This document shows, piece by piece, positions 1 through 49,600 of a DNA stretch of 64,000 bases (positions are counted from its first letter, which is position 1; the number at the start of each line of letters is the position of its first letter). The notes below the pieces were generated by a model. It saw only the letters and a list, made by a program, of their open reading frames with translations. It was not told the DNA's origin and made no database searches. The DNA lies in the IMG/VR virus record IMGVR_UViG_3300046694_000296, positions 1 through 64,000 of that record; one strand, 5' to 3'. The translations under genes and the position numbers were made by a program.

Positions 1-1
1 C

Positions 2-17387: not shown

Positions 17388-22375
<4,988 letters not shown>

Positions 22376-34490: not shown

Positions 34491-34889
34491 ATGACCTACA
34501 AGACCTTCACGCTCGGCGACCTACGCACGCTGCTCGCGCCGCTACCGACCACCCGCAAGCAAGCAGTTCTCTACACGCTCGACACGCGCGGCACGCTCGA
34601 CTACACGACCGTCCTCGGCTGGAAGGAGGCGCTGCGCACGCCCGCGAGCGAGTTCGCGAAGGACATCATTCGCGCACAGCCGCGCCACCTGCGCCTGGAC
34701 TACGTGTTCTGGGAGTATCACGAGACGGGCCAGGCCGCGCCGCTTTTCGGGCTCGAGGATAGCCTGCGGGAAGTGACGATGGGACGGAGCTTTGGCGAGC
34801 TGCAGGAGCTCTACGACCGAATGATCTGGATCGACAGCAGGGTGGAAGCGGAGCACTTCGTGCACACGCTGCTCAAGGAGCTGAATTAG
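34491..34889 (+). CDS. Hypothetical phage protein
   Basis: Purine-rich RBS; coherent codon usage. Confidence 0.6.
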   Translation: MTYKTFTLGDLRTLLAPLPTTRKQAVLYTLDTRGTLDYTTVLGWKEALRTPASEFAKDIIRAQPRHLRLDYVFWEYHETGQAAPLFGLEDSLREVTMGRSFGELQELYDRMIWIDSRVEAEHFVHTLLKELN

Positions 34890-35158
34890 AGATTGCGCCG
34901 GCGTGCGTGCAGGACGTTCAAGATGTCGATCCGCTTTAGCATGATGCGGTAGACGACGATGTAGTTCGGCAGAACGACCATCTCTCGCGTGTTCGGCCTG
35001 CGGCCCTCGCGATAGACATAGGGGTGATCGGGAAGTGTGGCGGCCGCAGCAAGGATCGTCTCTTGCACGAAATCTGCGGCGTCGATGCTGTCTTTGCTTA
35101 TGTGTTCGTGGATTTCGTCGAGTCGGCGTTCAGCACGCGGGGTCCAGTTAACCACCAC
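34886..35158 (-). CDS. RelE/ParE-family toxin
   Basis: 'WTPRAERRLDEI..I...A.......L...P..YREGR..TRE.V...NYIVVYR....I.ILNVLHARR'; GTG start overlapping the antitoxin end. Confidence 0.88.
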   Translation of the reverse strand: MVVNWTPRAERRLDEIHEHISKDSIDAADFVQETILAAAATLPDHPYVYREGRRPNTREMVVLPNYIVVYRIMLKRIDILNVLHARRRNL

Positions 35159-35345
35159 GCGCTTTTCTCCGCTCTGCGGCACGCGCGCGCAGGTTCGCGA
35201 CAACCTGATCGTGCGGGATCAACTCGCCGCGATCAGCTTCAGCCAGGCCCGCTTCGACCTCTTCACGGAACCACTTGTCGTAGGCTTCAGCCTCTTCCTT
35301 CGTGTCATGCCCGCTGACGGCGGGTTCGGTCCAGATATTTCCCAT
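35148..35345 (-). CDS. Cognate antitoxin
   Basis: 'AYDKWFREEVEAGLAEAD.G.LIPHDQV' antitoxin motif, upstream of and overlapping the toxin. Confidence 0.85.
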   Translation of the reverse strand: MGNIWTEPAVSGHDTKEEAEAYDKWFREEVEAGLAEADRGELIPHDQVVANLRARAAERRKARGG

Positions 35346-35566
35346 GAGTCACCTCATTCAGATGCCTTCATGATAGCGCGTGCAGCTTGGCACGTCACCG
35401 CGTCGTCTGCGGCGTGAACCCCTACCTGGTCGTGTTTGTTGATCATCGTTCTTCCTATGTCGTATTGATCAGGAGAAACGTGCTCGCGCTTGACGAAGCC
35501 ACGATAGAATAAAGCGCACCCACCGTCGCGGCCACGTGAGCCGTATGTTCAGCAAAGGCAGATGAC

Positions 35567-36115
35567 ATGAGCGTTGAGGAAGCAAAAAAGAGAGCGCTGG
35601 CAATCGTTCGGGAAAAGGGGCTGGACGTCGCCCTGATAACCGCGTTCCTTGAGACGCGGCATTACGCATCGTGGAGCAAACGGGACGATTTCGCCAAATA
35701 CAATATTGGCCTGTCGAACATATCTGGCGGACCGATGCCCGTGACGGTCGGATTCGCGAGCGGGAACGGCAACTCTGTGACAGCACAGCTGGACGGCATC
35801 GTGTTCACGCTGCGGGGCGTGTGGTATCTGCCTATGTCGTTTGATAGCAGTATCGCGACCGACATCTATGAAGGCGTCGAACTGTTGCTCGGTAACGATG
35901 TCGTGCTTGCTGGGGTGTATCAGGCGCGTGACCACGACGCGTGCATCCCGGCTCAATTTTCGCTGGTCAGCGTTGAGGGTTACCACTCAAGTCCGACGGC
36001 GGAACAGCTGCTCACGAAAATTTCAGATTTGATCAAGGCACACAAAGCGAAGCAAGCGGCCGAGCGCCAGGCCGCGGAAACGGAAAAGTATCGTGGCAAG
36101 TTCTCCTTTGACTAG
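35567..36115 (+). CDS. Accessory hypothetical protein
   Basis: 182-aa ORF with lower GC; no recognised motif. Confidence 0.6.
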   Translation: MSVEEAKKRALAIVREKGLDVALITAFLETRHYASWSKRDDFAKYNIGLSNISGGPMPVTVGFASGNGNSVTAQLDGIVFTLRGVWYLPMSFDSSIATDIYEGVELLLGNDVVLAGVYQARDHDACIPAQFSLVSVEGYHSSPTAEQLLTKISDLIKAHKAKQAAERQAAETEKYRGKFSFD

Positions 36116-36154
36116 GAGTTCCTCTGCGGTTTTCTTTTCACGCCTGCACAGGCT

Positions 36155-36182
36155 AGTTGACATAATACAAATTATCACCGTT
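36155..36182 (-). other. dif-like XerC/XerD recombination site
   Basis: Minus strand AACGGTGATAA-TTTGTA-TTATGTCAACT: 11-6-11 layout, ATAA/TTAT inner dyad, XerD arm 9/11 to TTATGTTAAAT. Confidence 0.75.
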
Positions 36183-36241
36183 TTGGGGCCAGATCATTTT
36201 TTGTCGTCCATGAGCTGGACAAGGCCGGGGAAGCATTAGCG

Positions 36242-36904
36242 TTATTTTTGCTTGTCCGGTTTCAGTTTTATGCCTTGCAGTATGCACATAGCCTCCCTAA
36301 GGTCGTCACCTTCTCGTTTCGGCCGCGCTGCTCGCGCTGCTCGCGCTTCTGGGGTGCACACATCCGCCGAGGTCAGCTTTGTCGCTGAGGCGGGAGCGGG
36401 TGCGCTTGCTGGTGCGATTGGGGGTGCGCTTGCAGTTGCGGGTGCGGTTGCAGTTGTGGGTGCGGGTGCGGGTGCGGGTGGAGAACCTACAGCCTTGGGT
36501 GGTGGACCGGGAGACGGCTCAGCCGGCAGCAACCTATCTAACATCGCCATATACAACTCGGCCTTCTTATCCTTGTCGATGTTGTCTCTCGACATCATCT
36601 GGCAAAAGAGATAGAGCAGTCGATACTTTACATTCGCCTGCTCCGATGTCGGCACGTCGGCGAGATTTTGCGTCACCTGACTCATGTTCCTCTCAACGTT
36701 CCCGCCGATGTCTACAATCTTGTATAACGTTTTTGCTCCGGCGCGAGCCTTTTCCTCGGACCTCTGTGTGAGTTGGATGCGCGGGTCGAGTGGAGAGCAA
36801 TCGTAGACGGGATCGTCGGCCAGCGCTTCGGTAGGACAAGCGACGGCGAAAACCGAAAACGCCGCAGCCGCGATGGAACGTTCCGTGTTCTTCAAATGAC
36901 GCAT
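36242..36904 (-). CDS. Exported accessory protein with Pro/Ala-rich linker
   Basis: Signal-peptide-like N-terminus (ALA|DD), paired Cys, PAPAPA linker. Confidence 0.6.
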   Translation of the reverse strand: MRHLKNTERSIAAAAFSVFAVACPTEALADDPVYDCSPLDPRIQLTQRSEEKARAGAKTLYKIVDIGGNVERNMSQVTQNLADVPTSEQANVKYRLLYLFCQMMSRDNIDKDKKAELYMAMLDRLLPAEPSPGPPPKAVGSPPAPAPAPTTATAPATASAPPIAPASAPAPASATKLTSADVCTPEARAARAARPKREGDDLREAMCILQGIKLKPDKQK

Positions 36905-36951
36905 GATGTTTGCCCCTGCTAACTGGCATTGCCTGTCGGCAAAAAAAGACT

Positions 36952-37248
36952 TTACGCCACCCGGCACCACCATGATTGAGCGTAGGCAGTTCCGTCCACA
37001 AACTCAATGCCAGTCAGCACAAACCCGAGCGGACCCATCCATGACAGCGCTGCGTCGTGCAGCGGCGGGAGCGGCTGCGGATCAGCTGCGCCGCCGGTCT
37101 GAAAGCGCGCGATGTTGGTGTAGCGGTTCAGCGCCGAGGACTTTTCCTGGCCGACCACCATGTCGCCCCGAACACCGGGCGCTCGCTGGACGTCGGCGTG
37201 ATCTTGCGCCTTGCCGCGCACGCGCATGGGTGTAGCTTGAATCAGCAT
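36952..37248 (-). CDS. Conserved small proteobacterial prophage protein
   Basis: 'LPPLHDA.L..M...GFVLTGIE.VDG.AYAQSWWCR' motif. Confidence 0.7.
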   Translation of the reverse strand: MLIQATPMRVRGKAQDHADVQRAPGVRGDMVVGQEKSSALNRYTNIARFQTGGAADPQPLPPLHDAALSWMGPLGFVLTGIEFVDGTAYAQSWWCRVA

Positions 37249-37250
37249 AA

Positions 37251-37670
37251 TTACCAGATGCGTTGAATTGCTGTGACCAGCGTGGCCGCCGCGAAAATAA
37301 ACGCGTAAAAAGCAATCATGGCTTTGACGATGCCAAGTAAGTGCCGGGTCGCGCGGCCCGTTCGTCGTGCCAAAATTTCGACGCCAGGGTCGACGGCCTT
37401 CTCCTCGGTTGTCTTCTGCTCAATTTTTGCGAGAGTTCCGTCAATGAGAGTCTGCTGCGGCTCGCTGACCTCCCGTCTTAACTCTTTCAGCTCGGCTACC
37501 AACTCGTTCATGTCCTTCTGAATTCTCGCTGCTTTCTCGTCTCGGAGCTTCTCAATCTCCAGCAGCCCTTTTTTGATCGTTATTGCACTAGAGAGGATTG
37601 TCGCAATTCCGACCAATGGGACGACGATTGCCGCTAGCACTTTAAGGACGTCGATCAAGCTATCGGGCAT
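37251..37670 (-). CDS. Two-TM coiled-coil membrane protein
   Basis: N- and C-terminal hydrophobic helices flanking a charged coiled coil; lower GC. Confidence 0.65.
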   Translation of the reverse strand: MPDSLIDVLKVLAAIVVPLVGIATILSSAITIKKGLLEIEKLRDEKAARIQKDMNELVAELKELRREVSEPQQTLIDGTLAKIEQKTTEEKAVDPGVEILARRTGRATRHLLGIVKAMIAFYAFIFAAATLVTAIQRIW

Positions 37671-37679
37671 GGTAACAAC

Positions 37680-37895
37680 TCAAAAATTCGATTCCAGCCA
37701 TGCCCTCGCCCACGCGATCCCGCGCTCGAAGGCCGCGGCCTCGGTGTCGAAGTAGCCGATGTCGGTGAAGTGGAAAATGTGCCCCATGTCGTCCTCGCCC
37801 AACGAGCCTCGCTCGACCTCGACCCACGCGTGCCAGTGATGGCCCTTCTTTTGGGGAACCGAGTGGATCGTCCACTCGTGATGCTCGACCTTCAT
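37680..37895 (-). CDS. Small hypothetical protein (Burkholderiales-type)
   Basis: GGAG RBS; 'GYFDTEAAAFERGIAWARAWL' motif. Confidence 0.7.
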   Translation of the reverse strand: MKVEHHEWTIHSVPQKKGHHWHAWVEVERGSLGEDDMGHIFHFTDIGYFDTEAAAFERGIAWARAWLESNF

Positions 37896-37927
37896 TGAAA
37901 ACTCTCCACAGGCTTACCCACCGTTTC

Positions 37928-37936
37928 TGTGGATAA
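37928..37936 (-). promoter_or_regulatory. DnaA box
   Basis: TGTGGATAA = reverse complement of TTATCCACA, just downstream of rep. Confidence 0.55.
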
Positions 37937-37968
37937 GTCGATACGTTCGGGCCTGACAGTTAGTTGCA

Positions 37969-38712
37969 TCAAAGCGGCAGCGTGCCTTGGGGATTGCGCC
38001 GGAATTCGAACCGAATGTCCGTCACCTTGCGCCCCTCCTTAATCGGCGACCACGTAATGTCCCATCCGTCTTTCTCCTGCAACTCCTTCACGGCGACCTC
38101 GATGATCTGCTTGCGAGCGTCCTTGAAGTTCTGCAGATGGCTCGGCTTCGCGTCCATCGCGTGCAGGAAGTCCTTGATGGGCATCTGACGCCAGCCGGTG
38201 TCTTTGAACTGCATGAGGAGCTCGAGCAGCCGCCACGAGTAGATCGAGCGAAGCTCCGACGCCTGGCGCAAGAGATAGGTCGTGTGGTTGCCTCGCAGCA
38301 CCATCAGATACGGCGTCGCTTCCGGCGAGAAGCGCAGCTCCACCCACCCTGCCCTGTCCACGTAAGTCGCCCCGCTCACCCACCGATCCTTGTGGGCCGC
38401 GATCGCACCGCGCTGCACCGGCTCGGTCCAGGTGATCCATCGCTCCGCGAGCCCCTCGACGCCGGACTTCAGTTGCTCGTAGGCGGTCGTGGGATCGAGA
38501 TTGAATGTCTCGGCGTATTCCTTCGCTGTCAGTCGCACCTTGTAGCGGTTGTGACTGTCAAGGCGCACACTGTCGATCTTCGCGGCGCACGACTTGACGA
38601 TGCGCTGCTCGGCAAGCGTCTTGAGCCCATGCGAGGCGACCAGGAGGTCGTTGTGCATGGAGACGTGTCGATCAACGAGACTCAGCCCAGGAGTGGCGTG
38701 CTTGAGCTTCAT
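37969..38712 (-). CDS. Plasmid replication initiator (Rep_3/RepB family)
   Basis: 'NDLL.AS..L.L.EQR', 'W V....Y....G.V.L.FS....PYL', 'L.S.YS.RL.ELL.QF', 'GRKV....F.F'. Confidence 0.92.
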   Translation of the reverse strand: MKLKHATPGLSLVDRHVSMHNDLLVASHGLKTLAEQRIVKSCAAKIDSVRLDSHNRYKVRLTAKEYAETFNLDPTTAYEQLKSGVEGLAERWITWTEPVQRGAIAAHKDRWVSGATYVDRAGWVELRFSPEATPYLMVLRGNHTTYLLRQASELRSIYSWRLLELLMQFKDTGWRQMPIKDFLHAMDAKPSHLQNFKDARKQIIEVAVKELQEKDGWDITWSPIKEGRKVTDIRFEFRRNPQGTLPL

Positions 38713-39137
38713 TGGGAGGAATTCCGGTTTCGCGGGAGCGGCTTATTGGGAGTGATCGGATTTTGCACCCCCTTTTCTCCTTTGTCACTGGGAGGATTTC
38801 CGATTCAATGGGAGGAAAACCGGGTTACTGGGAGGATTTCCGGGTCCGGGAGCCTGTGCATAACCCTACTTCGACCGGCTTTTCTCCCAATGCGTGACCG
38901 GTCGCCCTCCTACTTTGACCGGTCGCCCACCCATTTAACCCGGAATCTCTCCCATTACCTGCCTGCAAACCCATGCTGGGTAAGGCTTTGAGCCGTATAC
39001 AAACGTTTAAGAACGTATACAAACCACGCGCGAGTAGGCTGTGAACAACTTCTCGCATCTCTTTGATTACCCGGGATTCCTCCCAATCCAAATATCCCGG
39101 GAATCCTCCCAATTCGCGTAACCCGGAAATTCTCCCA
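38713..39137. repeat. Iteron array / plasmid origin, consensus TGGGAGGAWTTCCGGG
   Basis: Plus copies at 38713, 38789, 38809, 38829; inverted copies at 38875, 38939, 39070, 39096, 39122; degenerate near 38747, 38898, 38919; DnaA-like boxes at 38855-38863 and 39040-39048. Confidence 0.88.
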
Positions 39138-39175
39138 ATAGGACAAGTCCTAAAAGGCAGTCTGCAAAGGGGTGG

Positions 39176-39547
39176 TCAGTCCATGCCCAGGCGCTTCTTC
39201 TCGCGCGCGACTTCCTTGGCTACCGCCTCGGCGATGAAGTCGTTCTTGGTCTTGCCGAGCGCGAAGCAGAGCAGGTTCAAATCCTCCTTCAGCGCTGGCG
39301 GGATGCGAACCGGCTGCTGCACCGGCGTCTCCTTCTTCGGCAGCGCCGCGCGGATGGCCTGCAGATCCACACCTTTACCCACGCGAACCGGCGCCCTCCT
39401 CTCTGCAACGACCACCGGCTCAGGTGCTTGGTCCTCTATCTCCCCCGCCTGAGCTGCGGGCGCCGGCTCATCAATGGCCGCCGTCTCTGCATTCAGGCTG
39501 TCGAGCCACGCTTTGCTTTTCGGTGCGCTCATCGGGTCTTTGCTCAT
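39176..39547 (-). CDS. Partition adaptor, ParG-like ribbon-helix-helix protein
   Basis: Disordered N-terminus plus 'QQPVRIPPALKEDL......GKTKNDFIAEAV' RHH; downstream of parA. Confidence 0.75.
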   Translation of the reverse strand: MSKDPMSAPKSKAWLDSLNAETAAIDEPAPAAQAGEIEDQAPEPVVVAERRAPVRVGKGVDLQAIRAALPKKETPVQQPVRIPPALKEDLNLLCFALGKTKNDFIAEAVAKEVAREKKRLGMD

Positions 39548-40200
39548 GAAAACACTCCAAGGTAAAGGTCTTTCATTTCGTTGGCAGCGGCACTATCCCA
39601 ATCCCGGCCCGAGAGCTCGGACACCGCCCTCCCCTGCGCATTGGCGAACTTGTAGGTTTCACGCGTCGCGACCAGCTTCGTCAGGACCGGCAGCTTGTCC
39701 TCGAACGGCTCCAACTGTTTGATCATCGACTTGGTGAAGCGCTTGCGCGGATCGGCCTGATTGAGCACCACGCGAATGTCGATCTGGCGTTTGTAGCTGC
39801 CGACCAGTGCGTGTAGATCGGGCACCGTGTCGAGGTCCATCTGCGACGGGATCAGCGGCGCGAGCACCTTCTCAGCGACGGCCAGGCCGTAGCGGAAGCC
39901 GTCCGAGTCCTTGCCGCCGACGTCGATGAAAACGTCCTGATACTGATCGGTGAGACGATCGAGCACCTCGGCGAATTCCTGCTTCGTGATCGGCTTGCGC
40001 GGTTCCCACCGCTCGACATGGACCTGCGGAAGAGCCGGGTCGTTAGCGCGGCGTGCCGCCCACTTCGCGGTGCTGTTTTGTCCGTCGAGGTCGAATACGG
40101 CAACCGTGCGCTTGAGCGATGCCCGGATCGCTGCCAAATTCTGGGTGAAGGTAGATTTGCCCACGCCTCCCTTCTCTGTTCCCACCATAATTACGGCCAT
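39544..40200 (-). CDS. parA: ParA partition ATPase (type Ib)
   Basis: Deviant Walker A KGGVGKST, 'DLDGQ', 'FIDVGG'; no N-terminal HTH. Confidence 0.92.
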   Translation of the reverse strand: MAVIMVGTEKGGVGKSTFTQNLAAIRASLKRTVAVFDLDGQNSTAKWAARRANDPALPQVHVERWEPRKPITKQEFAEVLDRLTDQYQDVFIDVGGKDSDGFRYGLAVAEKVLAPLIPSQMDLDTVPDLHALVGSYKRQIDIRVVLNQADPRKRFTKSMIKQLEPFEDKLPVLTKLVATRETYKFANAQGRAVSELSGRDWDSAAANEMKDLYLGVFS

Positions 40201-40310
40201 AGAAGCCTCGATTGAATGTGTGAATTGTGCGTAGAGTAAAGGCTTGCGCCCCACACTTCAAGTAGATTATGAGCATTTGGAACTACGTCGGAGCAATGCA
40301 AGCCACTATT

Positions 40311-40366
40311 CAACCGAGGTATCAAGGTATGTTGGTATCAAGATACCAACCGAGGTATCAAAATAC
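40311..40366. promoter_or_regulatory. Candidate centromere (parS)/par operator
   Basis: CAACCGAGGTATCAA at 40311 and 40347, palindrome GTTGGTATC-AA-GATACCAAC at 40331-40350, repeated GGTAT; upstream of parA. Confidence 0.65.
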
Positions 40367-40615
40367 CGCCGGACGGAGAAACGCCGTTGTAGCCGAAGCA
40401 AGGTAGATCGGTCTGAGGCGAGGCAACGCGCAACTAAGTTTGTTTGGTCAGTAGGTCGGTCTGCCGAGAGCGAGCGTGAGACGATTCTCTCTATTGTGCG
40501 AGCGCGCACACAAGCCCCAACGCTACAGAGAGATCAATCGATGGCCCTAAGAAGCTGGCAAGGTGAGAGTAAAGCTTGATCGGCAGAACGCGATCAAAGA
40601 AGGGACCAGCCAAAC

Positions 40616-40641
40616 AAAAAACCCACGTCTGAGCGTGGGTT
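40616..40641 (-). terminator. Terminator of XRE regulator gene
   Basis: AACCCACG-TCTGAG-CGTGGGTT with A-run on its left (U-tract on minus strand). Confidence 0.75.
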
Positions 40642-40675
40642 CATATCCAACAAGTATGCGCCAATGGGTGCTCCC

Positions 40676-41095
40676 TTATTTGTCTGTTCGCTTGTTGTAA
40701 TCCTTCAGAACATGGCGAATTGCTCCATTGAACTCAGGATCGTCAAAGTCCACGTCAGCACCTTTGAGCTCTTCCGAGACTATCCGCTGGAAGTCTTTCT
40801 GCGATTTCGTCACGAACTTGTCGCCGAGCACCTCGTCGATGACCTTCCATGCATCCGGCATGTATTCGTTCATCACGAGCTTCAGTAAGTGCGCCGGATC
40901 GACTCCCAACACGATCGCCATTGCTCGGACCTTGTTGATCGGCAGCTTGGTCTTGCCTTGCTTGAACAGCGTGATGACGTTGCGGTTCGGATATTCGAGC
41001 GCATCGCATATCTCAGCCTGCGTCTTGCCGCTCAAGTCGATCGCGCGAGTGATGTATTCCGCCACCGAGAGTGGCTGCTGTTTCTTCGTGGTCAT
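40676..41095 (-). CDS. XRE-family HTH regulator (putative repressor)
   Basis: 'GKTQAEICDALEY.NRNVITLFKQGKTKLP...V..MA..LGVDP' HTH; divergent from lytic genes. Confidence 0.82.
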   Translation of the reverse strand: MTTKKQQPLSVAEYITRAIDLSGKTQAEICDALEYPNRNVITLFKQGKTKLPINKVRAMAIVLGVDPAHLLKLVMNEYMPDAWKVIDEVLGDKFVTKSQKDFQRIVSEELKGADVDFDDPEFNGAIRHVLKDYNKRTDK

Positions 41096-41111: not shown

Positions 41112-41297
41112 TAGTAATTAGTGACATACAGATTGTGAGAACAAATTGGTAACCGCTAACTTTCCCTCATGTGTTTGATTATAGAACGCAAAATTGGTTG
41201 CCGAGAAAAAAACACTGCCGATGCTGATGGCGATGCTGTTTGCTGAAGTTGCATCGTGTTCGGTCGCGCACACTACAATATAAGTTAGACGTTACAT
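41112..41297. promoter_or_regulatory. Divergent control region with three copies of the palindromic box
   Basis: Boxes at 41112-41127, 41147-41162, 41282-41297; AT-rich; TACAAT at 41274-41279. Confidence 0.6.
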
Positions 41298-41337: not shown

Positions 41338-41577
41338 ATGTTGCAGAATTTCACCATCGTGTCCCTGAGCCAAGACCAGGCGATCGTTCTGTTGGCCGAG
41401 ACGATCGAGGCCGGGAGCACGTTGGATGGGGGTTCGGTGCAAACGACCGTATGCCGTCATCCCGCGATTGGCGAGCTCATCCTGGTCCAGAACGCACTCG
41501 GGACGTCTGCCGTAGCACTCGACAAAGCCCAAATTCCTGCGTTAAGTGATTGGTTATCTCCTAGTCTGACCCATTGA
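41338..41577 (+). CDS. Small hypothetical protein
   Basis: GAGGAG RBS; first gene of rightward operon. Confidence 0.6.
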   Translation: MLQNFTIVSLSQDQAIVLLAETIEAGSTLDGGSVQTTVCRHPAIGELILVQNALGTSAVALDKAQIPALSDWLSPSLTH

Positions 41578-41650
41578 GCGCCAAGACGCGACCGTTAGAC
41601 TTTTGTCTATCGAATTAAAACCGTTGTTTTTTCTCAATAGGGGAATGACC

Positions 41651-43954
41651 ATGCAGGTGAACAATCGTGTCCTCGTGATGCGCGAGGCGATCACCAAAAT
41701 TGTGCCGATGTTAACTCAACGCTCAGTGCGCGTGACGCAGCAAGGCACGCAAGCATTCGTTGAATACCACGGGACCACGCTGGAGGTGAAGCGCGTCAAC
41801 CTGCCGTATATCCCCGAAGACGCCAGCGACCAACTGCTCGACGCGACGCAGGGCTTCCTCGATCACGAGGTCGGCCACGTCCTGTTCACCGAGCAGCGCT
41901 TTGTGAAAAAGGCCGCGAAGCTCAAGGTCCACTCGCTGCACAACATGGTCGAGGACACGTTCGTCGAGCGGAAGATGGGCGAGAAGTTTCCGGGCTGCGG
42001 CTCGAACCTGACGCGCATGCACGGGTTCTTCCTCACCGAATACATCGACACTCAGCTCGCCGAAAAGCCCGAGCACTCAGCCGCAATCCTGATGGTGGTT
42101 GCGATTCGTGCATGGGCGGGCCAGCCCGCCTTCGTCGACTACATGAAAGACAAGTGGGAGTTGATGAAGGACGTCGTTGACCGTCTCGGTGCCGACTTCC
42201 CGAAGATGGTCCGGGGCGTAGACAGCACCGAGCAGGCGCTCAAGGTCGCGATCGAAGCGAAGAAGCGCCTCGAACCGAAACCGCAGCCGACGCCGCCCGC
42301 GCCGCCGATGACCCCGCCGCCGGCACCGCCCGAGCCGCCGAAGTCGAGCACGCCGCCCGAAGAGCCGCAAGAACCGCAGCAGGGCGGCCAGGGTGACGGC
42401 GAGCCCGACGAGGAAAACGAGAACGACGAGCCGCAGCAGCCCAACGACATGCCGAACTTGGGCGAGCCGGAACCCGAGCAGAGCGCGCCGAGCACCCCGC
42501 AGCCGGAAGGTGACGACGAGGACGACGAACCGAAGGGTGAGGAAGAACAGGAGCCCAACGGTGAGGAGGTTCAGGAGCCGGAACCCGAGCCGACGCCCGA
42601 AGCGGGTGACGAGGAAGACGAGCCCGCACCTGCGCCGAGCAACGAAGCGGGCGATGAGTCCGACGAGGGCGAAGGTGACGACAGCGACGACGAGGATGAA
42701 AACTCGAGCGGTGGCATGTCGGGCGAGGAAGGGGAGAACGACAGCGACGCCGAAGACGAAGGTGCACCGAGCGGCGCGGGTGACGGTCTGCCCGGCGGTG
42801 AGCAGTCTGAGGACAGCGCCGAGAGTGACTCGGGCGACGCAGGTGGTGAGGACGAGAACGGGGCCGGTCAGCAGGACGCGGGCGACCAGCACGGTCACGG
42901 CACGCCGGAAGCAGGGGAGGGCGATCCGACCGGTGGGCGCGATCCGAACGACGATCGCGACTTCATGAAGGAGCTCGAGGACGCTGATATCAAGGAGTTC
43001 GACGAGGCTGCGGCCGAAGCGCTCTCGAAGCAAGCCGTCGAAGCGACCAAGGGCGCGGATTACACCGTGTTCACCCGCGATGAGGACGTGATCGGCGTGC
43101 TCGAAGTGCCGGAGGAGTTCGGGCAAGAGACGGTCACGCACATGCAATCGAAGGTGGACCACATGATCGGCCCGCTCCAGAAAGACCTGCAGCGCGCCAT
43201 TGCTGCCCGCTCGCAAGCAATCTGGACAGGTGGGCACCGGCGCGGCCAGCTGCACGGTGCCTCGCTTGCCCGCGTGCTGACCGGCCGCGAAGACGTGTTC
43301 CGCCAGAAGCAGGTGTCGCGCACGAAAGACGTCGCCGTGTCGCTGCTCGTCGATGGCTCGGGCTCGATGTGGCAGCACGGCAAGATCAAGGTGGCCTCAT
43401 ACGCCGCGTATGCGCTCTCGGCCGTGCTCGACAACATCGGCATCACCAACGAGGTGCTCGCCTTCAGCACGAACGAGTTCAGCTACGGCACGCTCAAAGC
43501 GATGAGCGAGGAGGCCAGCCAGCACCGCCTGCGTTACTCGCGGGGCGCCGCACTTGAGATCCGCATCCTCAAGTCGTTTGCTGAGCGCATGACGCCGATC
43601 GTGCGCCGTCGCTTCGCGCTGCTCTCGCAGGGTGATGCAATGATGCAAGAGAACGTCGATGGCGAGAGCGTGCAAATCGCGAACCACCGTCTCCAGCAGC
43701 AGCGCGCGACGCGCAAGGTGATGATGGTGCTCTCGGACGGGATGCCTGCGGTCAACGGGCACCGTGCCCCGATCCTCGCGAAGCACCTCAAAGAGGTCGT
43801 CAAGCAGATCGAGAAGCGCGGCACCGACGTCGTAGCGCTCGGCATTCTCGACCCGTCGGTTAAACAGTTCTACGACCGCGCGCTCGTCCTGAATTCGGTC
43901 GAGGAGCTGCCGTCGCTGGTCATGAAGGAACTTCACCGCCTCCTGGTGCAGTAA
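41651..43954 (+). CDS. CobT-like vWA protein with N-terminal HExxH domain and acidic linker
   Basis: HEVGH at 41864-41878 plus 'NMVED'; about 250-aa Pro/Asp/Glu linker; MIDAS DGSGS and 'VLSDG'. Confidence 0.85.
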   Translation: MQVNNRVLVMREAITKIVPMLTQRSVRVTQQGTQAFVEYHGTTLEVKRVNLPYIPEDASDQLLDATQGFLDHEVGHVLFTEQRFVKKAAKLKVHSLHNMVEDTFVERKMGEKFPGCGSNLTRMHGFFLTEYIDTQLAEKPEHSAAILMVVAIRAWAGQPAFVDYMKDKWELMKDVVDRLGADFPKMVRGVDSTEQALKVAIEAKKRLEPKPQPTPPAPPMTPPPAPPEPPKSSTPPEEPQEPQQGGQGDGEPDEENENDEPQQPNDMPNLGEPEPEQSAPSTPQPEGDDEDDEPKGEEEQEPNGEEVQEPEPEPTPEAGDEEDEPAPAPSNEAGDESDEGEGDDSDDEDENSSGGMSGEEGENDSDAEDEGAPSGAGDGLPGGEQSEDSAESDSGDAGGEDENGAGQQDAGDQHGHGTPEAGEGDPTGGRDPNDDRDFMKELEDADIKEFDEAAAEALSKQAVEATKGADYTVFTRDEDVIGVLEVPEEFGQETVTHMQSKVDHMIGPLQKDLQRAIAARSQAIWTGGHRRGQLHGASLARVLTGREDVFRQKQVSRTKDVAVSLLVDGSGSMWQHGKIKVASYAAYALSAVLDNIGITNEVLAFSTNEFSYGTLKAMSEEASQHRLRYSRGAALEIRILKSFAERMTPIVRRRFALLSQGDAMMQENVDGESVQIANHRLQQQRATRKVMMVLSDGMPAVNGHRAPILAKHLKEVVKQIEKRGTDVVALGILDPSVKQFYDRALVLNSVEELPSLVMKELHRLLVQ

Positions 43955-44089: not shown

Positions 44090-45301
44090 ATGAGCGATAC
44101 CGGCGACAAGATCTCTTGCCAGGAGTGCGGCGCGCTGACCCACGCGATCCAGTTGCACCTGCCGGAAGCCCACCCGGGCATGACCCTCGCCGACTACCAG
44201 GCGAAGTTTCCCGAAGCACCTGTGCTGTCCGAGCGCGCGAAAGCCGAGCTCGAGCGCCAGCGTGTCGCAAAGGCCGCTGCAGCGCCCGCAGTCACCGCCT
44301 CGATGGCCGGTAGCGCGCTGCCCGCTAACGTGGTCGCGCTGAACCCCGACGGCAAGACGACCGCCGCGATGCACGAGATCTTCGGCTTGGTCGATGGTCA
44401 TGGGAAACCTGTCGCAGCTGCCTTGAGCTCGCGCAAGGAACCCGTGCCGGTCACGATCTTCGCCTCCCCGCGCGACGCCGACATGGTGCCCGAGATCGAC
44501 GCAGGCTTCATTTTCGACATCGAAAACCTGAAGAATGCGCTGATGGCGATCGAGCTCCGCAAGAACCTCTACGTGTGGGGTCACGCCGGCACCGGTAAGA
44601 CGACGCTGATCGAACAGGTCGCGGCGCGCACCGGGCGTCCGGTCATTCGGGTGCAGCACTCGATCGGCACTGAAGAGTCGCACGTCCTCGGTCAGTGGGT
44701 GGTGCGTGGCGGGCAGACCGAGTTCCAGCCGGGCTTGCTCCCGCTCGCGATGCGCAACGGGTGGACCTACCTCGCGGACGAATACGACTTCGGTAACCCC
44801 GCGGTCCTCGCGGTCTACCAGCCGATTCTCGAACCGGGCAAGAGCCTGGTCATCAAGGATGCGCCCGACGAATGGCGCGTCGTGAAGCCGCACGAGAACT
44901 TCCGCTTCGTCGCAACGGGCAACACCAACGGTTCCGGTGACGACACGGGCCTCTATCAGGGCACGCAGATTCAGAACGCCGCGAACTACGACCGTTTCGG
45001 GATGGTCCTCGAAGCCGCCTACATGAAGCCGGAGCTCGAGTCGGCGATTCTCGTGCAGCGCTGCCGGATTCAGAAGAAGAACGCCGACTCGCTGGTCGAT
45101 TTCGCAAACCGCGTGCGCGAAGCCTACAAGAACAAGGAGATCGGCAGCACGATCTCCCCGCGATGCCTGATCGACGCGGCCGACATCGGTCTGCGACGCG
45201 CGAACTGGCGCGCGGGCGTGACGCTCTCCTTCATCAACAAACTCTCTGCGGTAGACCGCGCTGTCGTCGACGGCGTTGCATCGCGCATCTTCGACAAGTA
45301 A
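44090..45301 (+). CDS. CobS/MoxR-like AAA+ ATPase with N-terminal C2H2-like zinc finger
   Basis: CQEC..H...H; GHAGTGKT; 'ADEYD'; 'FRFVATGNT.G', 'DRF'. Confidence 0.9.
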   Translation: MSDTGDKISCQECGALTHAIQLHLPEAHPGMTLADYQAKFPEAPVLSERAKAELERQRVAKAAAAPAVTASMAGSALPANVVALNPDGKTTAAMHEIFGLVDGHGKPVAAALSSRKEPVPVTIFASPRDADMVPEIDAGFIFDIENLKNALMAIELRKNLYVWGHAGTGKTTLIEQVAARTGRPVIRVQHSIGTEESHVLGQWVVRGGQTEFQPGLLPLAMRNGWTYLADEYDFGNPAVLAVYQPILEPGKSLVIKDAPDEWRVVKPHENFRFVATGNTNGSGDDTGLYQGTQIQNAANYDRFGMVLEAAYMKPELESAILVQRCRIQKKNADSLVDFANRVREAYKNKEIGSTISPRCLIDAADIGLRRANWRAGVTLSFINKLSAVDRAVVDGVASRIFDK

Positions 45302-46609: not shown

Positions 46610-49600
46610 TTGAATATCAAGCATCTGCTTTCCGCGAGGTCGGACTTCTCGCTCGGGGAGTCCACGCTGCAGGTCGGCACCCTGATCGAAACCGCGAAGG
46701 CACAGGGTTACGAGACGGTTGCGCTGGTGGACAACATGTCCATCTCCAACATGGTCGCGTTCACGGACAAGGCGAAGAAAGCGGGGATCAAGCCGATCGT
46801 GGGCTGCACGATCCGCATGGTCGACGATCCGACCTACCGCAAGCCGCCGAAGGCGTCGGGCGAGGTCGAGCGTCCGAACCCGCTCGTCATGCTCAAGGTC
46901 TACGCGAAGACCGACGCGGGCCTGCGCAGCCTCATGAAGCTGCTCTCCAAGGGCAACAGCCCGGAATACTTCTACTATCACTCGCGGGTGGGCCTCGAGG
47001 ACGTGCTGCAGCTGGAAGAGTGCGCGGTCGCGACCGGTGACTTCTACGGCCTGTTCCATCACAAGCGGTGGGAGGAGATCGCGTATCGCCTGAGCGAGAA
47101 GTTCGGCCGCGACTTCTGTGTGGAGTTCGTGCCCGGCGCGACGCCGCTGCACAAGACGCTCAACAAGCTCGCGCTCACCTGCCTCGACCGCTTCACCGCG
47201 ACGCCGATCGGCACCTGGCCCGCGCTCTATGCGACCGACGATCAGGCCGACAGCCTCGACGTGCTGCGCGCGATTCTCGGCAACAACAAGATGACCGACC
47301 GGTGGCTGAACAAGCCCTACCTGCGGAACTTCTCGGTGCGCGCGCCGGGCGATCTGGTGAAGGCGCTCGTCGCCGAAGGCTTGCCCGCGAAAGAGATCAT
47401 CAAAGGCAACCAGGCGCTTGTCGATTCGTGCACGTTCGAATTCAAGAAGCTCGACCCGTGCCTGCCGAAGATGGCAGAGGACGAGTTCAAAGCGCTCTGC
47501 GCCGAAGTCGCGAAGGGCTGGGCGCAACGCTTTGCGGCGCCCGTGCTCGGGCACAAGCCGGAACCCGAAGAGCTGCCGCAATACAAAGCGCGGCTCGCCT
47601 ACGAGCTCGACGTGCTCCGCAAAATGGGCTTCTCGGGCTACTTCCTGCTCGTGCAGCACATCGTCCAGTGGAGCAAGCAAAACGGAATTTTGGTCGGTCC
47701 CGGCCGCGGGAGCGTTGGCGGTTCCCTCGTCGCTTACCTGATGGGAATCACGGACGTCGATCCGATCCGCTTCAATCTGCTGTTCGAGCGCTTCATCAAT
47801 CCGGAGCGTCTCGACTTGCCCGACGCCGACCTCGACTTCATGTCCAAGCGCCGGCACGAGGTGATCGATTACATCGCCACTCACTTCGGGCGCGAGAACG
47901 TCGCGGGCGTGTCCAACTACAACACGATGGGCGCCGCGGGCGTGATGCGCGATACGTCGCGTGTCCACGAACTCAACCCGTTCGACTATGCCTGCTCGAA
48001 GCAGATGGAAAAGCAGCACGGGGTGTCGCTCTCGCTGGAGGAGTCGGCCGCGATCGTGCCAGAGATCGACAAGTTCAAGGGCAGCTTCCCGGACATTTGG
48101 AAGCACATGGTGAACCTCGAAGGTGCCGCGCGCGGTCTTGGGCAGCATGCAGCGGGCGTCATCGTCGCGGGCGAGCCGATCGTCAACCGCGCCGTGGTCG
48201 AAACCCGCACGGGCGGGCCGGTCTGCAATTGGGACAAGCGAACGGTCGAGGACTTCGGGCTCATCAAGATGGACATTTTGGGCTTGACTAACCTCGACGT
48301 GATGAAGCTCGCCGCCGACTACATCAAGGAGCGGCACGGCAAGACGATCGACTTCCTGCGGCTGCCGCTCGACGACAAGAAGGTGCTGGAAGCATTCGGG
48401 CGGGGCGACACCACGGGCGTGTTCCAGTTCGAGTCGCCCGGCATGCGCCGGCTCTTGCGTGAGATGGCGCTATCGGGCGCGGTGACGTTCGACGATCTGG
48501 TGGCGGTGGTCGCGCTGTATCGCCCGGGTCCGCTCGACGCGGGTCTGTGCGACGACTACGTGGCGATCAAGCAGGGTTCCAAGCAGCCGTATTACGAGCA
48601 CCCGAACATGGCCCCTGCGCTCAAGGACACCTACGGGGTGATCGTGTATCAGGAGCAGGTGATGCAGATCGCGCGTGACCTGGCGGGCTTCTCGATGGCG
48701 GGCGCCGACCATCTGCGTAAAGCGATGGGTAAGAAGGACAAGGAGAAGATGGCCGAAATGCGCGACAAGTGGGTGGCCGGTTGCGTGTCGCACTCGGGCA
48801 TGACCGAAGGCTCGGCCAATGCGCTCTTCGACAAGATCGAAGTGTTCGCCGGATACGCCTTCAACAAATCGCACTCAGTGGAGTATGCGGTCATCAGCTG
48901 GTGGACGATGTGGCTGAAGGTCAACTACCCGGCCGAATACTTTGCGGCCTCGCTCACTGAGATCGACAAAGAAGAGAAGCGCGAGCCGCTCGTGCAGGAT
49001 GCGCGGCGCATGAGCATGCAGGTGTTGCCGCCCGATATAAACCGGTCAAGCGCCCGGGTAGAGATCGTGGGCGAGGATAAGCTCTACGCCCCGTTCCAGG
49101 CGCTCAAGGGTTTATCCGAGAAGGCGGCAGGCTACATCGTAGACGCACGCATAAAGTGGGGCAAGCCGTTCGCGAACCGCACCGACTTCGACGCCGCAAT
49201 GAAGGCGGCAGGCTACACCGGCCGGCACATCAACCAGGCGGTCAAGGACAAACTCGTGCTGATCGGTGCCTTCGCCGAGTGCGAGGGCGACAAGGTGCCC
49301 GCCATGCACCCCGATCGGCTGAAAAACCGCATCGAGCTACTGCCAGGTTTCACGGTCGATACTGTGAAAGCTGACCGAACGCTTAACGCTGAGCACCTCG
49401 CCTTGCTGCAATTGGTGCGCATCGGTGAGGAGACGCGCTCGTGCGAGAAGTGCTCGCTCAAGGGCGGCTGTCACCCGATGCCGCGCATCGGGAAGACGCC
49501 GAAGTTCATGGTCGTGTCCGACAACCCGAACTGGCAGGAGGAAAAGGCAGGGAAGCTCCTCGAAGGCGATAACGCGAAGCTCGTCATCAACGCGTTGAAG

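What the first reader, a model, noticed from the sequence alone, without database searches (positions are those of the whole stretch)
34886..41095. Self-contained plasmid-maintenance island inside a virion-encoding genome
Seen: TA pair, dif-like site, Rep_3 with iterons, ParA/RHH adaptor with candidate parS and a repressor, almost all on the minus strand amid plus-strand lytic genes; no integrase in the window. Established: this combination defines phage-plasmids. Inference: an SSU5-like phage backbone carrying a betaproteobacterial-type replicon, possibly an uncharacterised lineage.
Basis: partly seen in the sequence, partly recalled or inferred. Interest (0 to 1): 0.6.

Follow-up and report, generated by a model that had tools for sequence, protein, structure and literature searches.

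The report
Plasmid-maintenance cassette of a rhizosphere phage-plasmid
This stretch is the plasmid-style replication, partition and addiction module of a temperate tailed phage that apparently persists as a ~109-kb plasmid rather than integrating; close relatives carry other plasmid replicons, and one carries an integrase, between the same two genes.

Summary
Window 34,886-41,095 carries a ParE2/PaaA2-type toxin-antitoxin pair. It also carries a Rep_3 (WH1+WH2) initiator with nine iterons (0.09 expected by chance), two DnaA boxes and an AT-rich stretch. Next come a small ParA, a 123-aa probable ribbon-helix-helix adaptor, palindromic repeats upstream of parA, and an HTH repressor. The dif-like site scores at chance level.

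The 215,656-bp "complete" record is an assembly join of two related genomes, A (108.9 kb, which holds the window) and B (106.6 kb). They meet at a 156-nt identical stretch in the capsid gene. Independent contigs show that each genome closes on itself. Neither encodes a tyrosine or serine recombinase.

Genome A is collinear with Salmonella phage SSU5 but only distantly related (29 of 145 ORFs, 37% aa). Its nearest cultured relative is a closed 107-kb circular plasmid of Cupriavidus metallidurans.

Relatives fill the ligase-to-repressor slot differently: RepA_C (B), TrfA (Cupriavidus plasmid, L040), an HTH_36 protein (L012, L019), or a tyrosine integrase without Rep or ParA (L011). One diverged backbone (L013) carries this rep-par cassette at 92-96% nt against 73-83% in the flanks.

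Verdict: a new, uncharacterised member of the phage-plasmid kind, with a swappable lysogeny-maintenance cassette. Plasmid maintenance itself is untested.

The parts
34886..35203 (-). ParE2-type toxin of a type II toxin-antitoxin pair. The likely true start is GTG 35158, overlapping the antitoxin stop by 11 nt.
   Evidence: Pfam ParE_toxin 2.2e-14; PDB ParE2 chains 5czf and 5cw7, 1e-16; start codons and the GGAGAA Shine-Dalgarno sequence.
35148..35345 (-). PaaA2/RelB-type antitoxin.
   Evidence: NCBIfam TA_RelB_antitoxin 59.7 bits, above its cut-off of 50; Pfam PaaA2 1.2e-5, below its cut-off. A homologous pair sits at the same place in sister genome B.
35567..36115 (+). 182-aa ORF of unknown function. 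Cargo specific to genome A.
   Evidence: No Pfam, PHROG or NCBIfam hit; no usable Atlas hit. Identical in L009; absent from B and L013.
36242..36973 (-). 243-aa ORF of unknown function with a Pro/Ala-rich repeat. Cargo.
   Evidence: No family hit; 12-nt periodic repeat at 36384-36479.
36952..37248 (-). 98-aa ORF of unknown function, conserved in L013.
   Evidence: Codon-position GC pattern typical of a gene; 83% nt identity to L013 3080-3366; no Pfam hit.
37251..37670 (-). 139-aa ORF of unknown function with hydrophobic ends. Cargo.
   Evidence: No family hit.
37680..37895 (-). 71-aa conserved small protein just downstream of rep. It marks the left edge of the stretch shared with L013.
   Evidence: 66% aa to the B homologue beside RepA_C and 77% aa to the L013 homologue. 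Weak CV_2116 hit below its cut-off. Atlas neighbours are unnamed.
37928..37936 (-). Perfect DnaA box, TTATCCACA, just downstream of rep.
   Evidence: L001 1460-1468. Two matches in 5.3 kb, 0.23 expected.
37969..38712 (-). Rep_3 (WH1+WH2) iteron-binding replication initiator.
   Evidence: Rep3_N 5.8e-34 and Rep3_C 9.4e-15; PDB 1hkq, 1rep and 2nra; 96% nt and 99% aa to L013.
38713..38843 (+). Four iteron copies in inverted orientation (38713, 38789, 38809, 38829). They flank a promoter-like site on the minus strand (38788-38760), and one reaches up to the rep ATG. Proposed rep operator for autorepression.
38855..38863 (-). DnaA box, TTATGCACA, inside the origin.
   Evidence: L001 2387-2395.
38875..39137 (-). 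oriV. Five direct iterons (39137-39123, 39111-39097, 39085-39071, 38954-38940, 38889-38875). An AT-rich stretch at about 39035-38990 holds two GTTTGTATACG copies. Two GGGCGACCGGTCA repeats follow.
39176..39547 (-). 123-aa partition adaptor (centromere-binding protein). Disordered N-terminus and a probable C-terminal ribbon-helix-helix. Its start overlaps the parA stop.
   Evidence: PHROG Arc-like 1e-3; YlcI_YnfO_N 7e-5; alignment with adaptors of relatives; AlphaFold2 model.
39544..40254 (-). Small ParA ATPase without an N-terminal HTH (type Ib). The likely start is ATG 40200, giving 218 aa.
   Evidence: Pfam CbiA, MipZ and AAA_31; weak ParF match, 4dzz; Walker A KGGVGKST and start codons; 98% aa to L013.
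40311..40367 (.). Candidate parS and par operator. Two GGTATCWWGATACC palindromes and an exact 15-nt direct repeat, CAACCGAGGTATCAA.
   Evidence: The motif TTGGTATCAAGA is repeated upstream of parA in genome B.
40619..40642 (-). Terminator-like hairpin with a T-run after the repressor gene. It coincides with the point where A/B nucleotide homology resumes (40613).
40676..41095 (-). HTH regulator, putative lysogeny (immunity) repressor. It is part of the conserved backbone.
   Evidence: PHROG transcriptional regulator/repressor families, 7e-7 to 3e-4. Conserved at 37-71% aa in relatives, including integrase-bearing ones.
41143..41203 (.). Two AAATTGGTWRCCG repeats in the divergent intergenic region. 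Candidate operators.
   Evidence: Sequence only; significance was not tested.
41338..41577 (+). 79-aa ORF transcribed divergently from the repressor. A Cro-like role is proposed but unproven.
   Evidence: Conserved in relatives at 31-77% aa; no family hit.

Best explanation
The interval is the lysogeny-maintenance region of a temperate siphovirus-type phage-plasmid, genome A, about 108.9 kb.

Shown by sequence:
- A Rep_3 initiator sits next to an origin. The origin has five direct iterons, an AT-rich stretch and DnaA boxes. Four inverted iterons flank the rep promoter-like site and reach up to the rep start codon.
- A parA-adaptor operon lies behind palindromic repeats.
- There is a ParE2/PaaA2-type toxin-antitoxin pair.
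- An HTH repressor is divergently transcribed from a small ORF.

Inferred mechanism, by analogy with pPS10, F and R6K Rep proteins, with TP228 ParFG-type partition, and with PaaA2-ParE2:
- In the lysogen, Rep monomers bind the direct iterons and, with host DnaA, open the AT-rich stretch for theta replication.
- Rep dimers on the inverted copies repress rep. Iteron handcuffing limits copy number.
- The RHH adaptor binds the repeats upstream of parA, autoregulates the operon and stimulates ParA, which segregates copies.
- ParE kills cells that lose the element.
- The HTH repressor silences the plus-strand lytic genes. These include the phage's own DnaB, primase, DnaE, ligase and recombination genes, which presumably drive lytic replication.

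The rep-par core (37,680-40,350) behaves as an exchangeable cassette in a fixed slot between the ligase/orf164 genes and the repressor.
For: - Domains and repeats are documented.
- The phage is complete. The window has capsid, tape measure, tail J, tail fibre, DnaB, primase, ligase, DnaE, SSB, exonuclease, recombinase, SbcCD and RNR genes. Terminase, portal and scaffold lie outside it.
- PF00589 and PF00239 find nothing in the whole record, while the controls respond.
- Genome A closes on itself. In two other samples, contigs run from the A-end through the 156-nt repeat. They then carry A-start letters at 2 of 2 and 14 of 14 diagnostic positions.
- The island with both of its junctions is 99.9% identical over 11.9 kb in an independent contig, L009.
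- The nearest cultured relative is a closed circular 107,329-bp plasmid of C. metallidurans ZM02. It has the same order of genes, and its slot holds TrfA, an adaptor, a MipZ/ParA protein and an HTH protein.
- The slot varies among relatives. B has RepA_C with its own iterons. L040 has TrfA. L012 and L019 have an HTH_36 protein plus ParA. L011 has a 421-aa integrase and no Rep or ParA.
- Provirus-class relatives have a long integrase and lack ParA.
- Against L013 the cassette is 92-96% nt identical, against 73-83% nt in the flanks.
Against: - Nothing here shows replication, partition or killing activity, or an extrachromosomal state in a cell.
- A circular assembly is equally expected from a circularly permuted, headful-packaged virion genome.
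- No multimer-resolution function was found. There is no recombinase and no credible dif-like site.
- The RHH assignment of the adaptor rests on sub-threshold profile hits and a medium-confidence model.
- The host is unknown.
- Recombinases of other classes (for example DDE transposases) were not searched for.
- Two ParB/Srx-like genes elsewhere in genome A could be alternative ParA partners.
Confidence: 0.85

Rival explanations
1. The element integrates after all, by a recombinase not recognised here or by host XerCD. The Rep_3/ParA/TA genes would then be a relic, or would serve only transiently, for example during lytic or early replication.
For: - Many relatives of the same backbone are integrative. 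Among records at least 90% complete, 17 of 24 have a tyrosine recombinase. Several records are provirus-class with a long integrase and no ParA.
- Only two recombinase families were searched in the window's own record.
Against: - All cassette genes are intact and have gene-like codon bias.
- The iterons and operator layout are intact.
- The cassette is kept at 92-96% nt across diverged backbones.
- In relatives, ParA and long integrases mostly exclude each other.
- The Cupriavidus relative is a free circular plasmid.
- The dif-like site is at chance level.
Confidence: 0.08
2. The island is an assembly artefact: a fragment of a true plasmid joined wrongly into a phage contig.
For: The record is demonstrably a mis-join of two genomes at a shared repeat.
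Against: - The same island, with both flanks, is found at 99.9% identity in an independent contig (L009).
- Its words are held in 24 rhizosphere runs.
- The syntenic slot holds plasmid modules in B, L013, L012, L019 and L040 and in a closed isolate plasmid.
- The only mis-join lies in the capsid gene, 35 kb from the island.
Confidence: 0.01
3. The 215.7-kb record is real: a heterodimeric cointegrate or jumbo phage-plasmid carrying two replicons and two par systems.
For: - IMG/VR classes the record as complete, with direct terminal repeats.
- A and B occur together in at least one other run, X4.
Against: - The 127-nt 'terminal repeat' occurs three times (positions 1, 108903 and 215530). It is the only exact stretch of 127 nt or more that A and B share.
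- A 105-kb contig from another sample joins B-start to B-end directly.
- Contigs in runs X5 and X7 join A-end to A-start.
- Near-complete relatives are 98-116 kb.
Confidence: 0.04

Closest known systems
Cupriavidus metallidurans ZM02 unnamed plasmid NZ_CP083720.1 (107,329 bp, circular), with the near-identical NZ_CP090528.1
   Same: - The gene order matches: tail, capsid, portal and terminase genes, then DnaB, ligase, [slot], CobT-like, MoxR/CobS-like, DnaE, RecA, SbcCD and RNR.
- At least 45 of 145 ORFs are shared, at a mean of 45% aa; DnaE is 55.7% identical.
- The slot lies on the opposite strand and holds an initiator, an adaptor, a ParA/MipZ protein and an HTH protein.
   Different: - The initiator is TrfA, not Rep_3.
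- None of the genes annotated in its slot is a ParE/PaaA2 pair.
- The sequence is too diverged for nucleotide matches.
- No paper found here treats it as a phage-plasmid.
Salmonella phage SSU5 (NC_018843) and the SSU5 supergroup of phage-plasmids (Pfeifer et al. 2021, PMC7969092)
   Same: - It is a siphovirus-type phage-plasmid of about 103 kb.
- It is collinear from terminase through tail genes to DnaB, primase, ligase, CobT/CobS-like genes, DnaE, SSB, exonuclease, recombinase, SbcCD and RNR.
- TerL is 61%, portal 54% and the major capsid protein 54% aa identical.
   Different: - Only 29 of 145 ORFs are shared, at a mean of 37% aa.
- SSU5's ParA (30.5 kb) and rep (59.4 kb) are scattered. Its ligase-to-CobT interval holds only small ORFs and a tRNA.
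- SSU5's rep is not detectably similar to this Rep_3.
- The SSU5 supergroup is enterobacterial and mostly IncFIB (PMC7969092).
Acinetobacter 'AB' phage-plasmid group, and Rhizobium phage RHEph10 / pLM21S1-like elements
   Same: - DnaE is 49-50% aa identical to the Acinetobacter baumannii plasmids of about 108 kb, and 44-46% to the RHEph10-like phages.
- The AB group is described as distantly related to SSU5, in phage and recombination genes (PMC7969092).
   Different: - The host clades differ.
- Whole-genome gene sharing with these elements was not measured here.
Burkholderia phages KS14 and FLC10 (KS14 is listed among phage-plasmids in PMC7969092)
   Same: Their Rep_3 initiators are 44-45% aa identical to the window's. 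These are the closest phage-borne homologues.
   Different: They are about 32-kb phages with an unrelated backbone. Only the initiator is shared.
Iteron replicons pPS10 (RepA), F (RepE) and R6K (Pi)
   Same: - The initiator has the same WH1+WH2 architecture.
- Direct iterons lie beside an AT-rich stretch and DnaA boxes.
- Inverted copies lie at the rep promoter.
   Different: - Sequence similarity is low (E about 1e-10 or weaker).
- Iteron spacing is 26 nt for the first three copies and irregular after that.
- Function is untested.
PaaA2-ParE2 of E. coli O157:H7, and ParF-ParG of plasmid TP228
   Same: - The toxin matches ParE2 structures at 1e-16, and the antitoxin hits PaaA2/RelB models.
- ParA is a small Walker-type ATPase, followed by a small protein with a C-terminal RHH-like fold.
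   Different: - No PaaR2-like third gene was identified.
- The ParF match is weak (E 0.003).
- The adaptor has no significant sequence match to ParG or to any PDB chain.

Membership tests
Phage-plasmid (temperate phage maintained as a plasmid) | Complete virion, packaging and tail gene set | tested here: met
   Major head, tape measure, tail J and fibre genes; terminase, portal and scaffold genes.
Phage-plasmid (temperate phage maintained as a plasmid) | Plasmid-type replication initiator and partition system | tested here: met
   Rep3_N and Rep3_C with iterons; ParA with an adaptor.
Phage-plasmid (temperate phage maintained as a plasmid) | No integrase in the complete genome | tested here: met
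   PF00589 and PF00239 find nothing in the 215-kb record, and the controls respond. Other recombinase classes were not searched.
Phage-plasmid (temperate phage maintained as a plasmid) | Extrachromosomal maintenance in a lysogen, and inducible virions | not testable with these tools
   Only indirect support. The genome closes on itself in assemblies, and a relative is a closed circular plasmid in an isolate.
SSU5 supergroup (sensu Pfeifer et al. 2021) | High gene-repertoire relatedness to SSU5-group members (between-community wGRR 0.23-0.59 in PMC7969092) | tested here: not met
   29 of 145 ORFs are shared at a mean of 37% aa. That is roughly 0.08 by my own rough estimate, the level the paper reports between SSU5 and the AB group. 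Gene order is conserved.
SSU5 supergroup (sensu Pfeifer et al. 2021) | IncFIB-type replicon | tested here: not met
   The window's Rep_3 finds no homologue in SSU5 by tblastn at E 1e-5. SSU5's rep lies at a different locus.
Rep_3 iteron-type theta replicon | Initiator with WH1 and WH2 domains | tested here: met
   Both Pfam domains score above their cut-offs; PDB 1hkq, 1rep and 2nra.
Rep_3 iteron-type theta replicon | Cluster of direct iterons next to rep, an AT-rich stretch and DnaA box(es), and inverted copies at the rep promoter | tested here: met
   Nine copies against 0.09 expected; layout read from the sequence; DnaA boxes; promoter-like site.
Rep_3 iteron-type theta replicon | Rep-dependent autonomous replication | not testable with these tools
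   Needs a mini-replicon experiment.
Type Ib (ParF/ParG-like) partition system | Small ParA with a deviant Walker A and no N-terminal HTH domain | tested here: met
   218-236 aa with KGGVGKST; CbiA, MipZ and AAA_31 hits; weak ParF match. NCBIfam ParA_partition scores 108.7 bits, below its equivalog cut-off of 180.
Type Ib (ParF/ParG-like) partition system | Downstream small centromere-binding protein with a ribbon-helix-helix fold | tested here: inconclusive
   Sub-threshold Arc-like and YlcI hits; no PDB sequence match. The AlphaFold2 model shows an extended stretch and two helices at pLDDT 82-89, but the strand of an RHH forms only in a dimer.
Type Ib (ParF/ParG-like) partition system | Repeated centromere/operator site upstream of parA | tested here: met
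   Two palindromes against 0.16 expected; a 15-nt exact repeat; a related repeated motif upstream of parA in genome B. Binding is untested.
PaaA2-ParE2-type type II toxin-antitoxin | ParE-fold toxin preceded by an overlapping small antitoxin of the PaaA2/RelB type | tested here: met
XerCD dif/cer-type multimer-resolution site | 28-bp site with conserved XerC and XerD arms around a 6-8-nt spacer | tested here: not met
   The best site, 36155-36182, matches 5 of 11 and 9 of 11 arm positions. Shuffles give equal or better scores. There is no match to the dif core. The comparison was with E. coli dif only.

The most novel reading that the evidence does not exclude
In this phage lineage, the interval between ligase/orf164 and the immunity repressor acts as a dedicated 'mode-of-lysogeny' slot.
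- At least four non-homologous plasmid initiators with their own iterons (Rep_3, RepA_C, TrfA, an HTH_36 protein) replace one another there, and in one relative a tyrosine integrase does.
- The par genes and the backbone stay homologous.
- Two sister phage-plasmids (A and B, about 80% nt) that co-occur in the same rhizosphere samples differ in exactly the initiator and iterons. That fits replicon exchange as an escape from incompatibility.
- The Rep_3-par cassette has moved recently between backbones.
Probability: 0.6. Interest if true: 0.55.

Novelty: new member of a known kind. Interest (0 to 1): 0.45.

Why it matters
Phage-plasmids are known mainly from enterobacteria, Acinetobacter, Vibrio and Firmicutes. 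This adds an unstudied, apparently widespread rhizosphere lineage: its DNA is held in 24 rhizosphere metagenome runs.

The lineage is a clean natural series. The same backbone appears with four different plasmid initiators, and with an integrase in the same slot. That makes three questions directly testable:
- How do temperate phages switch between plasmid and integrated lysogeny?
- Does replicon exchange relieve incompatibility between co-resident relatives?
- Which minimal cassette suffices for maintenance?

There is also a practical warning. A record labelled a complete 216-kb genome with direct terminal repeats is really two genomes of about 108 kb joined at a shared k-mer.

Tried and rejected
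- **Nucleotide searches.** Megablast of the island against the phage and plasmid collections found nothing.
- **dif-like site.** Rejected as chance-level.
- **ParA-adaptor complex.** Complex prediction on ParA (residues 19-236) plus the adaptor gave no verdict (score 0.01, mark 0.34). This is not evidence for or against binding.
- **Adaptor sequence.** The PDB sequence search was blank.
- **RNA genes.** No Rfam family and no tRNA in the window.
- **Cargo ORFs.** Pfam, PHROG, NCBIfam and Atlas left them unexplained.
- **Host identification failed:**
  - The genome-contig scan gave one distant hit in a Sutterellaceae MAG.
  - The portal protein found nothing in 401 sampled genomes of that MAG's order.
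  - Exact-protein look-ups placed an integrated relative in GCA_001524825.1 (an 890-kb contig) and GCA_001524725.1. The tools could not name those organisms. No host flank could be fetched either.
- **Large protein searches.** The two large protein searches (search for homologous proteins, the search of protein representatives) were not used. Family scans and locus comparisons sufficed.
- **Rival readings.** The ideas that the island is a mis-assembled plasmid fragment, and that the 215-kb record is a real dimer, were considered and rejected (see the rival explanations).

Full report
**What is in the interval**

ORF listing and codon-position GC give a minus-strand block inside a mostly plus-strand genome. 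A crude gene call finds 111 plus and 35 minus ORFs. From left to right:
- **Toxin, 34886-35203.** Pfam ParE_toxin 2.2e-14; PDB ParE2 chains at 1e-16. The likely start is GTG 35158, behind a GGAGAA Shine-Dalgarno sequence.
- **Antitoxin, 35148-35345.** NCBIfam TA_RelB_antitoxin 59.7 bits, above its cut-off of 50. Pfam PaaA2 just under its cut-off.
- **Cargo, 35.4-37.7 kb.** ORFs of 182, 243, 98 and 139 aa that no library explains.
- **A conserved 71-aa ORF, 37680-37895.**
- **Rep_3 initiator, 37969-38712.** Rep3_N 5.8e-34 and Rep3_C 9.4e-15. PDB relatives are pPS10 RepA, F RepE and R6K Pi.
- **A 460-bp non-coding origin region.**
- **A 123-aa adaptor, 39176-39547.** Its start overlaps the parA stop.
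- **A small ParA, 39544-40254.** The likely start is ATG 40200. The Walker A motif is KGGVGKST.
- **A 420-bp leader.**
- **An HTH regulator, 40676-41095.** PHROG regulator families, 7e-7.

**The origin**

The motif TGGGAGRWWWNCCGG occurs nine times between 38713 and 39137. 0.09 matches are expected in the whole window, and the only other match is at 62869.

Read in the direction of rep, the layout is:
- three direct iterons spaced 26 nt apart;
- an AT-rich stretch with two GTTTGTATACG copies;
- a fourth iteron;
- two GGGCGACCGGTCA repeats;
- a fifth iteron;
- a DnaA box, TTATGCACA;
- three iterons in inverted orientation;
- a promoter-like site;
- a last inverted iteron reaching up to the rep ATG.

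A perfect DnaA box, TTATCCACA, lies just downstream of rep. This is the textbook arrangement of an iteron replicon with an autorepressed initiator. That reading rests on established knowledge of pPS10, F and R6K. No activity was tested.

**Partition**

- Upstream of parA there are two GGTATCWWGATACC palindromes, 0.16 expected, and an exact 15-nt direct repeat.
- Genome B repeats a related motif, TTGGTATCAAGA, at the same place.
- The adaptor has only sub-threshold Arc-like/RHH hits and no PDB sequence match.
- Aligned with the equivalent ORFs of relatives, it shows the strand-helix-helix sequence pattern.
- Its AlphaFold2 model has an extended stretch plus helices at 84-97 and 101-120, pLDDT 82-89, behind a disordered N-terminus. 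This is compatible with a ParG-like protein but does not prove it.

**The dif-like site**

The best candidate (36155-36182) matches 5 of 11 XerC-arm and 9 of 11 XerD-arm positions of E. coli dif. Shuffled genomes give best scores of 15-17 out of 22, against 14 here. A dif core with 3 mismatches allowed finds nothing. I treat the site as unsupported. The element therefore has no identified multimer-resolution function.

**What the record really is**

The window is the first 64 kb of a 215,656-bp IMG/VR record classed as complete, with direct terminal repeats.
- A self-comparison shows two collinear halves at about 80% nt identity.
- The 127-nt 'terminal repeat' occurs three times, at 1, 108903 and 215530. 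It is part of a 156-nt identical stretch in the major capsid gene. That stretch is the only exact match of 127 nt or more between the halves.
- The record is therefore R-A-R-B-R, a walk through both loops of a figure-of-eight assembly graph.
- A 105,058-bp contig from another metagenome is 98-99% identical to B and joins B-start directly to B-end.
- I laid public contigs on the A-end/R/B-start junction (3,001 letters, within the operators' limit). In run X5 a 1,274-nt contig, and in run X7 a 606-nt contig, run from the A-end through R. Beyond R they carry the letters of A-start at 2 of 2 and 14 of 14 diagnostic positions. In X6 the contigs stop at the end of R. X4 holds both forms.

So A (108,902 bp, holding the window) and B (about 106.6 kb) are separate self-closing genomes. 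Relatives that are near-complete measure 98-116 kb.

**Phage or plasmid**

- Genome A has capsid, tape measure, tail J, tail fibre, DnaB, primase, ligase, CobT/CobS-like genes, DnaE, SSB, exonuclease, recombinase, SbcCD and RNR in the window.
- Terminase, portal and scaffold lie outside it.
- Neither PF00589 nor PF00239 matches anywhere in A or B, and the controls respond.
- The gene order matches Salmonella phage SSU5 from end to end.
- Only 29 of 145 ORFs are shared with SSU5, at a mean of 37% aa. SSU5 keeps its ParA and rep elsewhere.
- By DnaE, closer relatives are two closed circular plasmids of Cupriavidus metallidurans of about 107 kb (55.7% aa). Then come Acinetobacter plasmids of about 108 kb (49-50%), and RHEph10-like Rhizobium phages (44-46%).
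- The Cupriavidus plasmid has a full phage gene set and the same slot on the opposite strand.

**The slot in relatives**

A scan of IMG/VR with the CobS-like protein gave 80 loci. Their content between ligase/orf164 and the HTH gene is:

| Element | Slot content |
|---|---|
| L009 | The A island, 99.9% nt over 11.9 kb including both junctions |
| B, L010, L015 | H-NS-like gene, a ParE/PaaA2 pair, orf76, RepA_C (3e-31) with its own GCGCCCCCATTTATTCG iterons and DnaA boxes, then adaptor, ParA and HTH |
| L040, Cupriavidus plasmid | TrfA, adaptor and ParA |
| L012, L019 | An HTH_36/DnaD_N-like protein and ParA |
| L011 (backbone about 80% nt to A) | A 421-aa tyrosine integrase with an arm-binding domain, plus an SRAP protein; no ParA, Rep_3, RepA_C or TrfA |
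| L023 | An integrase, a short tyrosine recombinase and ParA |

- Across 50 records, those classed as provirus with a long integrase at their edge lack ParA.
- ParA-positive records mostly lack long integrases. Some of them have a tyrosine recombinase of about 210 aa next to ParA, probably a resolvase.
- The HTH gene and the divergent 79-aa ORF are conserved in both kinds. I therefore assign them to the backbone immunity switch, not to the cassette.

**Cassette mobility**

- Against L013 (a 107.5-kb record with terminal repeats), identities are: rep 96.1% nt (99% aa), parA 94.7%, the adaptor 91.9% and the origin 90.6%.
- The flanking genes in the same comparison are 73-83% nt.
- The block shared with L013 is 37,680-40,350.
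- Between A and B, the backbone is 81-87% nt, parA is 74%, and rep with its iterons has no homology.
- The smallest unit replaced between A and B is thus the initiator with its iterons.

**Literature**

- Pfeifer et al. 2021 (PMC7969092) define phage-plasmid groups. They note conserved phage genes and variable plasmid genes.
- Pfeifer and Rocha 2024 (PMC10879196) document conversion of P1-like phage-plasmids to integrative prophages. They suggest that replicase loss or exchange avoids incompatibility.
- I found no paper on this lineage or on the Cupriavidus plasmids as phage-plasmids.

The finding is therefore a new member of a known kind, with an unusually clear modular series.

**Limits**

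- No function was measured.
- A circular assembly does not separate a plasmid from a circularly permuted virion genome.
- The host is unknown. Attempts to identify it are listed under Tried and rejected.
- Rep_3's nearest plasmid relatives (at most 49% aa) span alpha-, beta- and gammaproteobacteria, so 'betaproteobacterial-type replicon' is not established.
- No alternative genetic code was used.

Noticed in passing
G000:C1 positions 1, 108903 and 215530 (window 1-156): The record labelled a complete 215.7-kb genome with direct terminal repeats is two genomes of about 108 kb, joined at a 156-nt identical stretch of the major capsid gene. The 127-nt 'terminal repeat' occurs three times.
   Followed up: yes
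window 18,900-22,060 (C-terminal part of the tail-fibre gene 17391-21821): This is the only large structural stretch with no nucleotide homology between sister genomes A and B. It suggests different receptor specificity.
   Followed up: no
L004 2505-2858 (G000 143,504-143,857): Genome B carries an H-NS-like gene (Histone_HNS 1.9e-9) directly beside its toxin-antitoxin pair. Genome A has no counterpart.
   Followed up: no
G000 99,290-99,976 and 100,391-101,101 (outside the window): Two ParB/Srx-like proteins, followed by two genes that PHROGs annotates as ABC-transporter ATPases, lie upstream of the terminase. The same arrangement is seen in SSU5 and in the Cupriavidus plasmid. They could be packaging or partition factors.
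   Followed up: partly
window 41603-43954 and 44090-45301: A CobT-like protein of 783 aa sits beside a MoxR/CobS-like AAA ATPase. Roughly 220 residues of it, by eye from the translation, form an acidic and proline-rich low-complexity insert. The pair is conserved next to the slot in every relative examined. Its role in the phage is unknown.
   Followed up: no
L100-L103 4496-5191 (relatives of window 46610-49954): In integrated relatives, the 1119-aa DnaE-type polymerase also hits the UDG (uracil-DNA glycosylase) family. The window's own polymerase was not checked for this.
   Followed up: no
L011 4107-4814 and 5275-6540: The integrase-bearing relative has an SOS-response-associated peptidase (SRAP, 1.6e-45) next to the integrase, in the slot where A has its replicon.
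   Followed up: partly
window 36384-36479: A 12-nt periodic repeat encodes a Pro/Ala-rich tract in the 243-aa ORF of unknown function.
   Followed up: no
window 34886-41095: Near-identical island DNA is held in 24 rhizosphere metagenome runs, 15 of them with at least half of the sampled words. No RNA run is on record.
   Followed up: partly
L103 (ncbi GCA_001524825.1, contig LOXU01000053.1, 486,826-492,016): A relative at 70% aa identity in the CobS-like protein lies in the middle of an 890-kb contig of an isolate genome, so it is chromosomally integrated. In one sequencing run the same element assembles as a stand-alone 105.7-kb contig that starts 151 nt before its integrase gene.
   Followed up: partly
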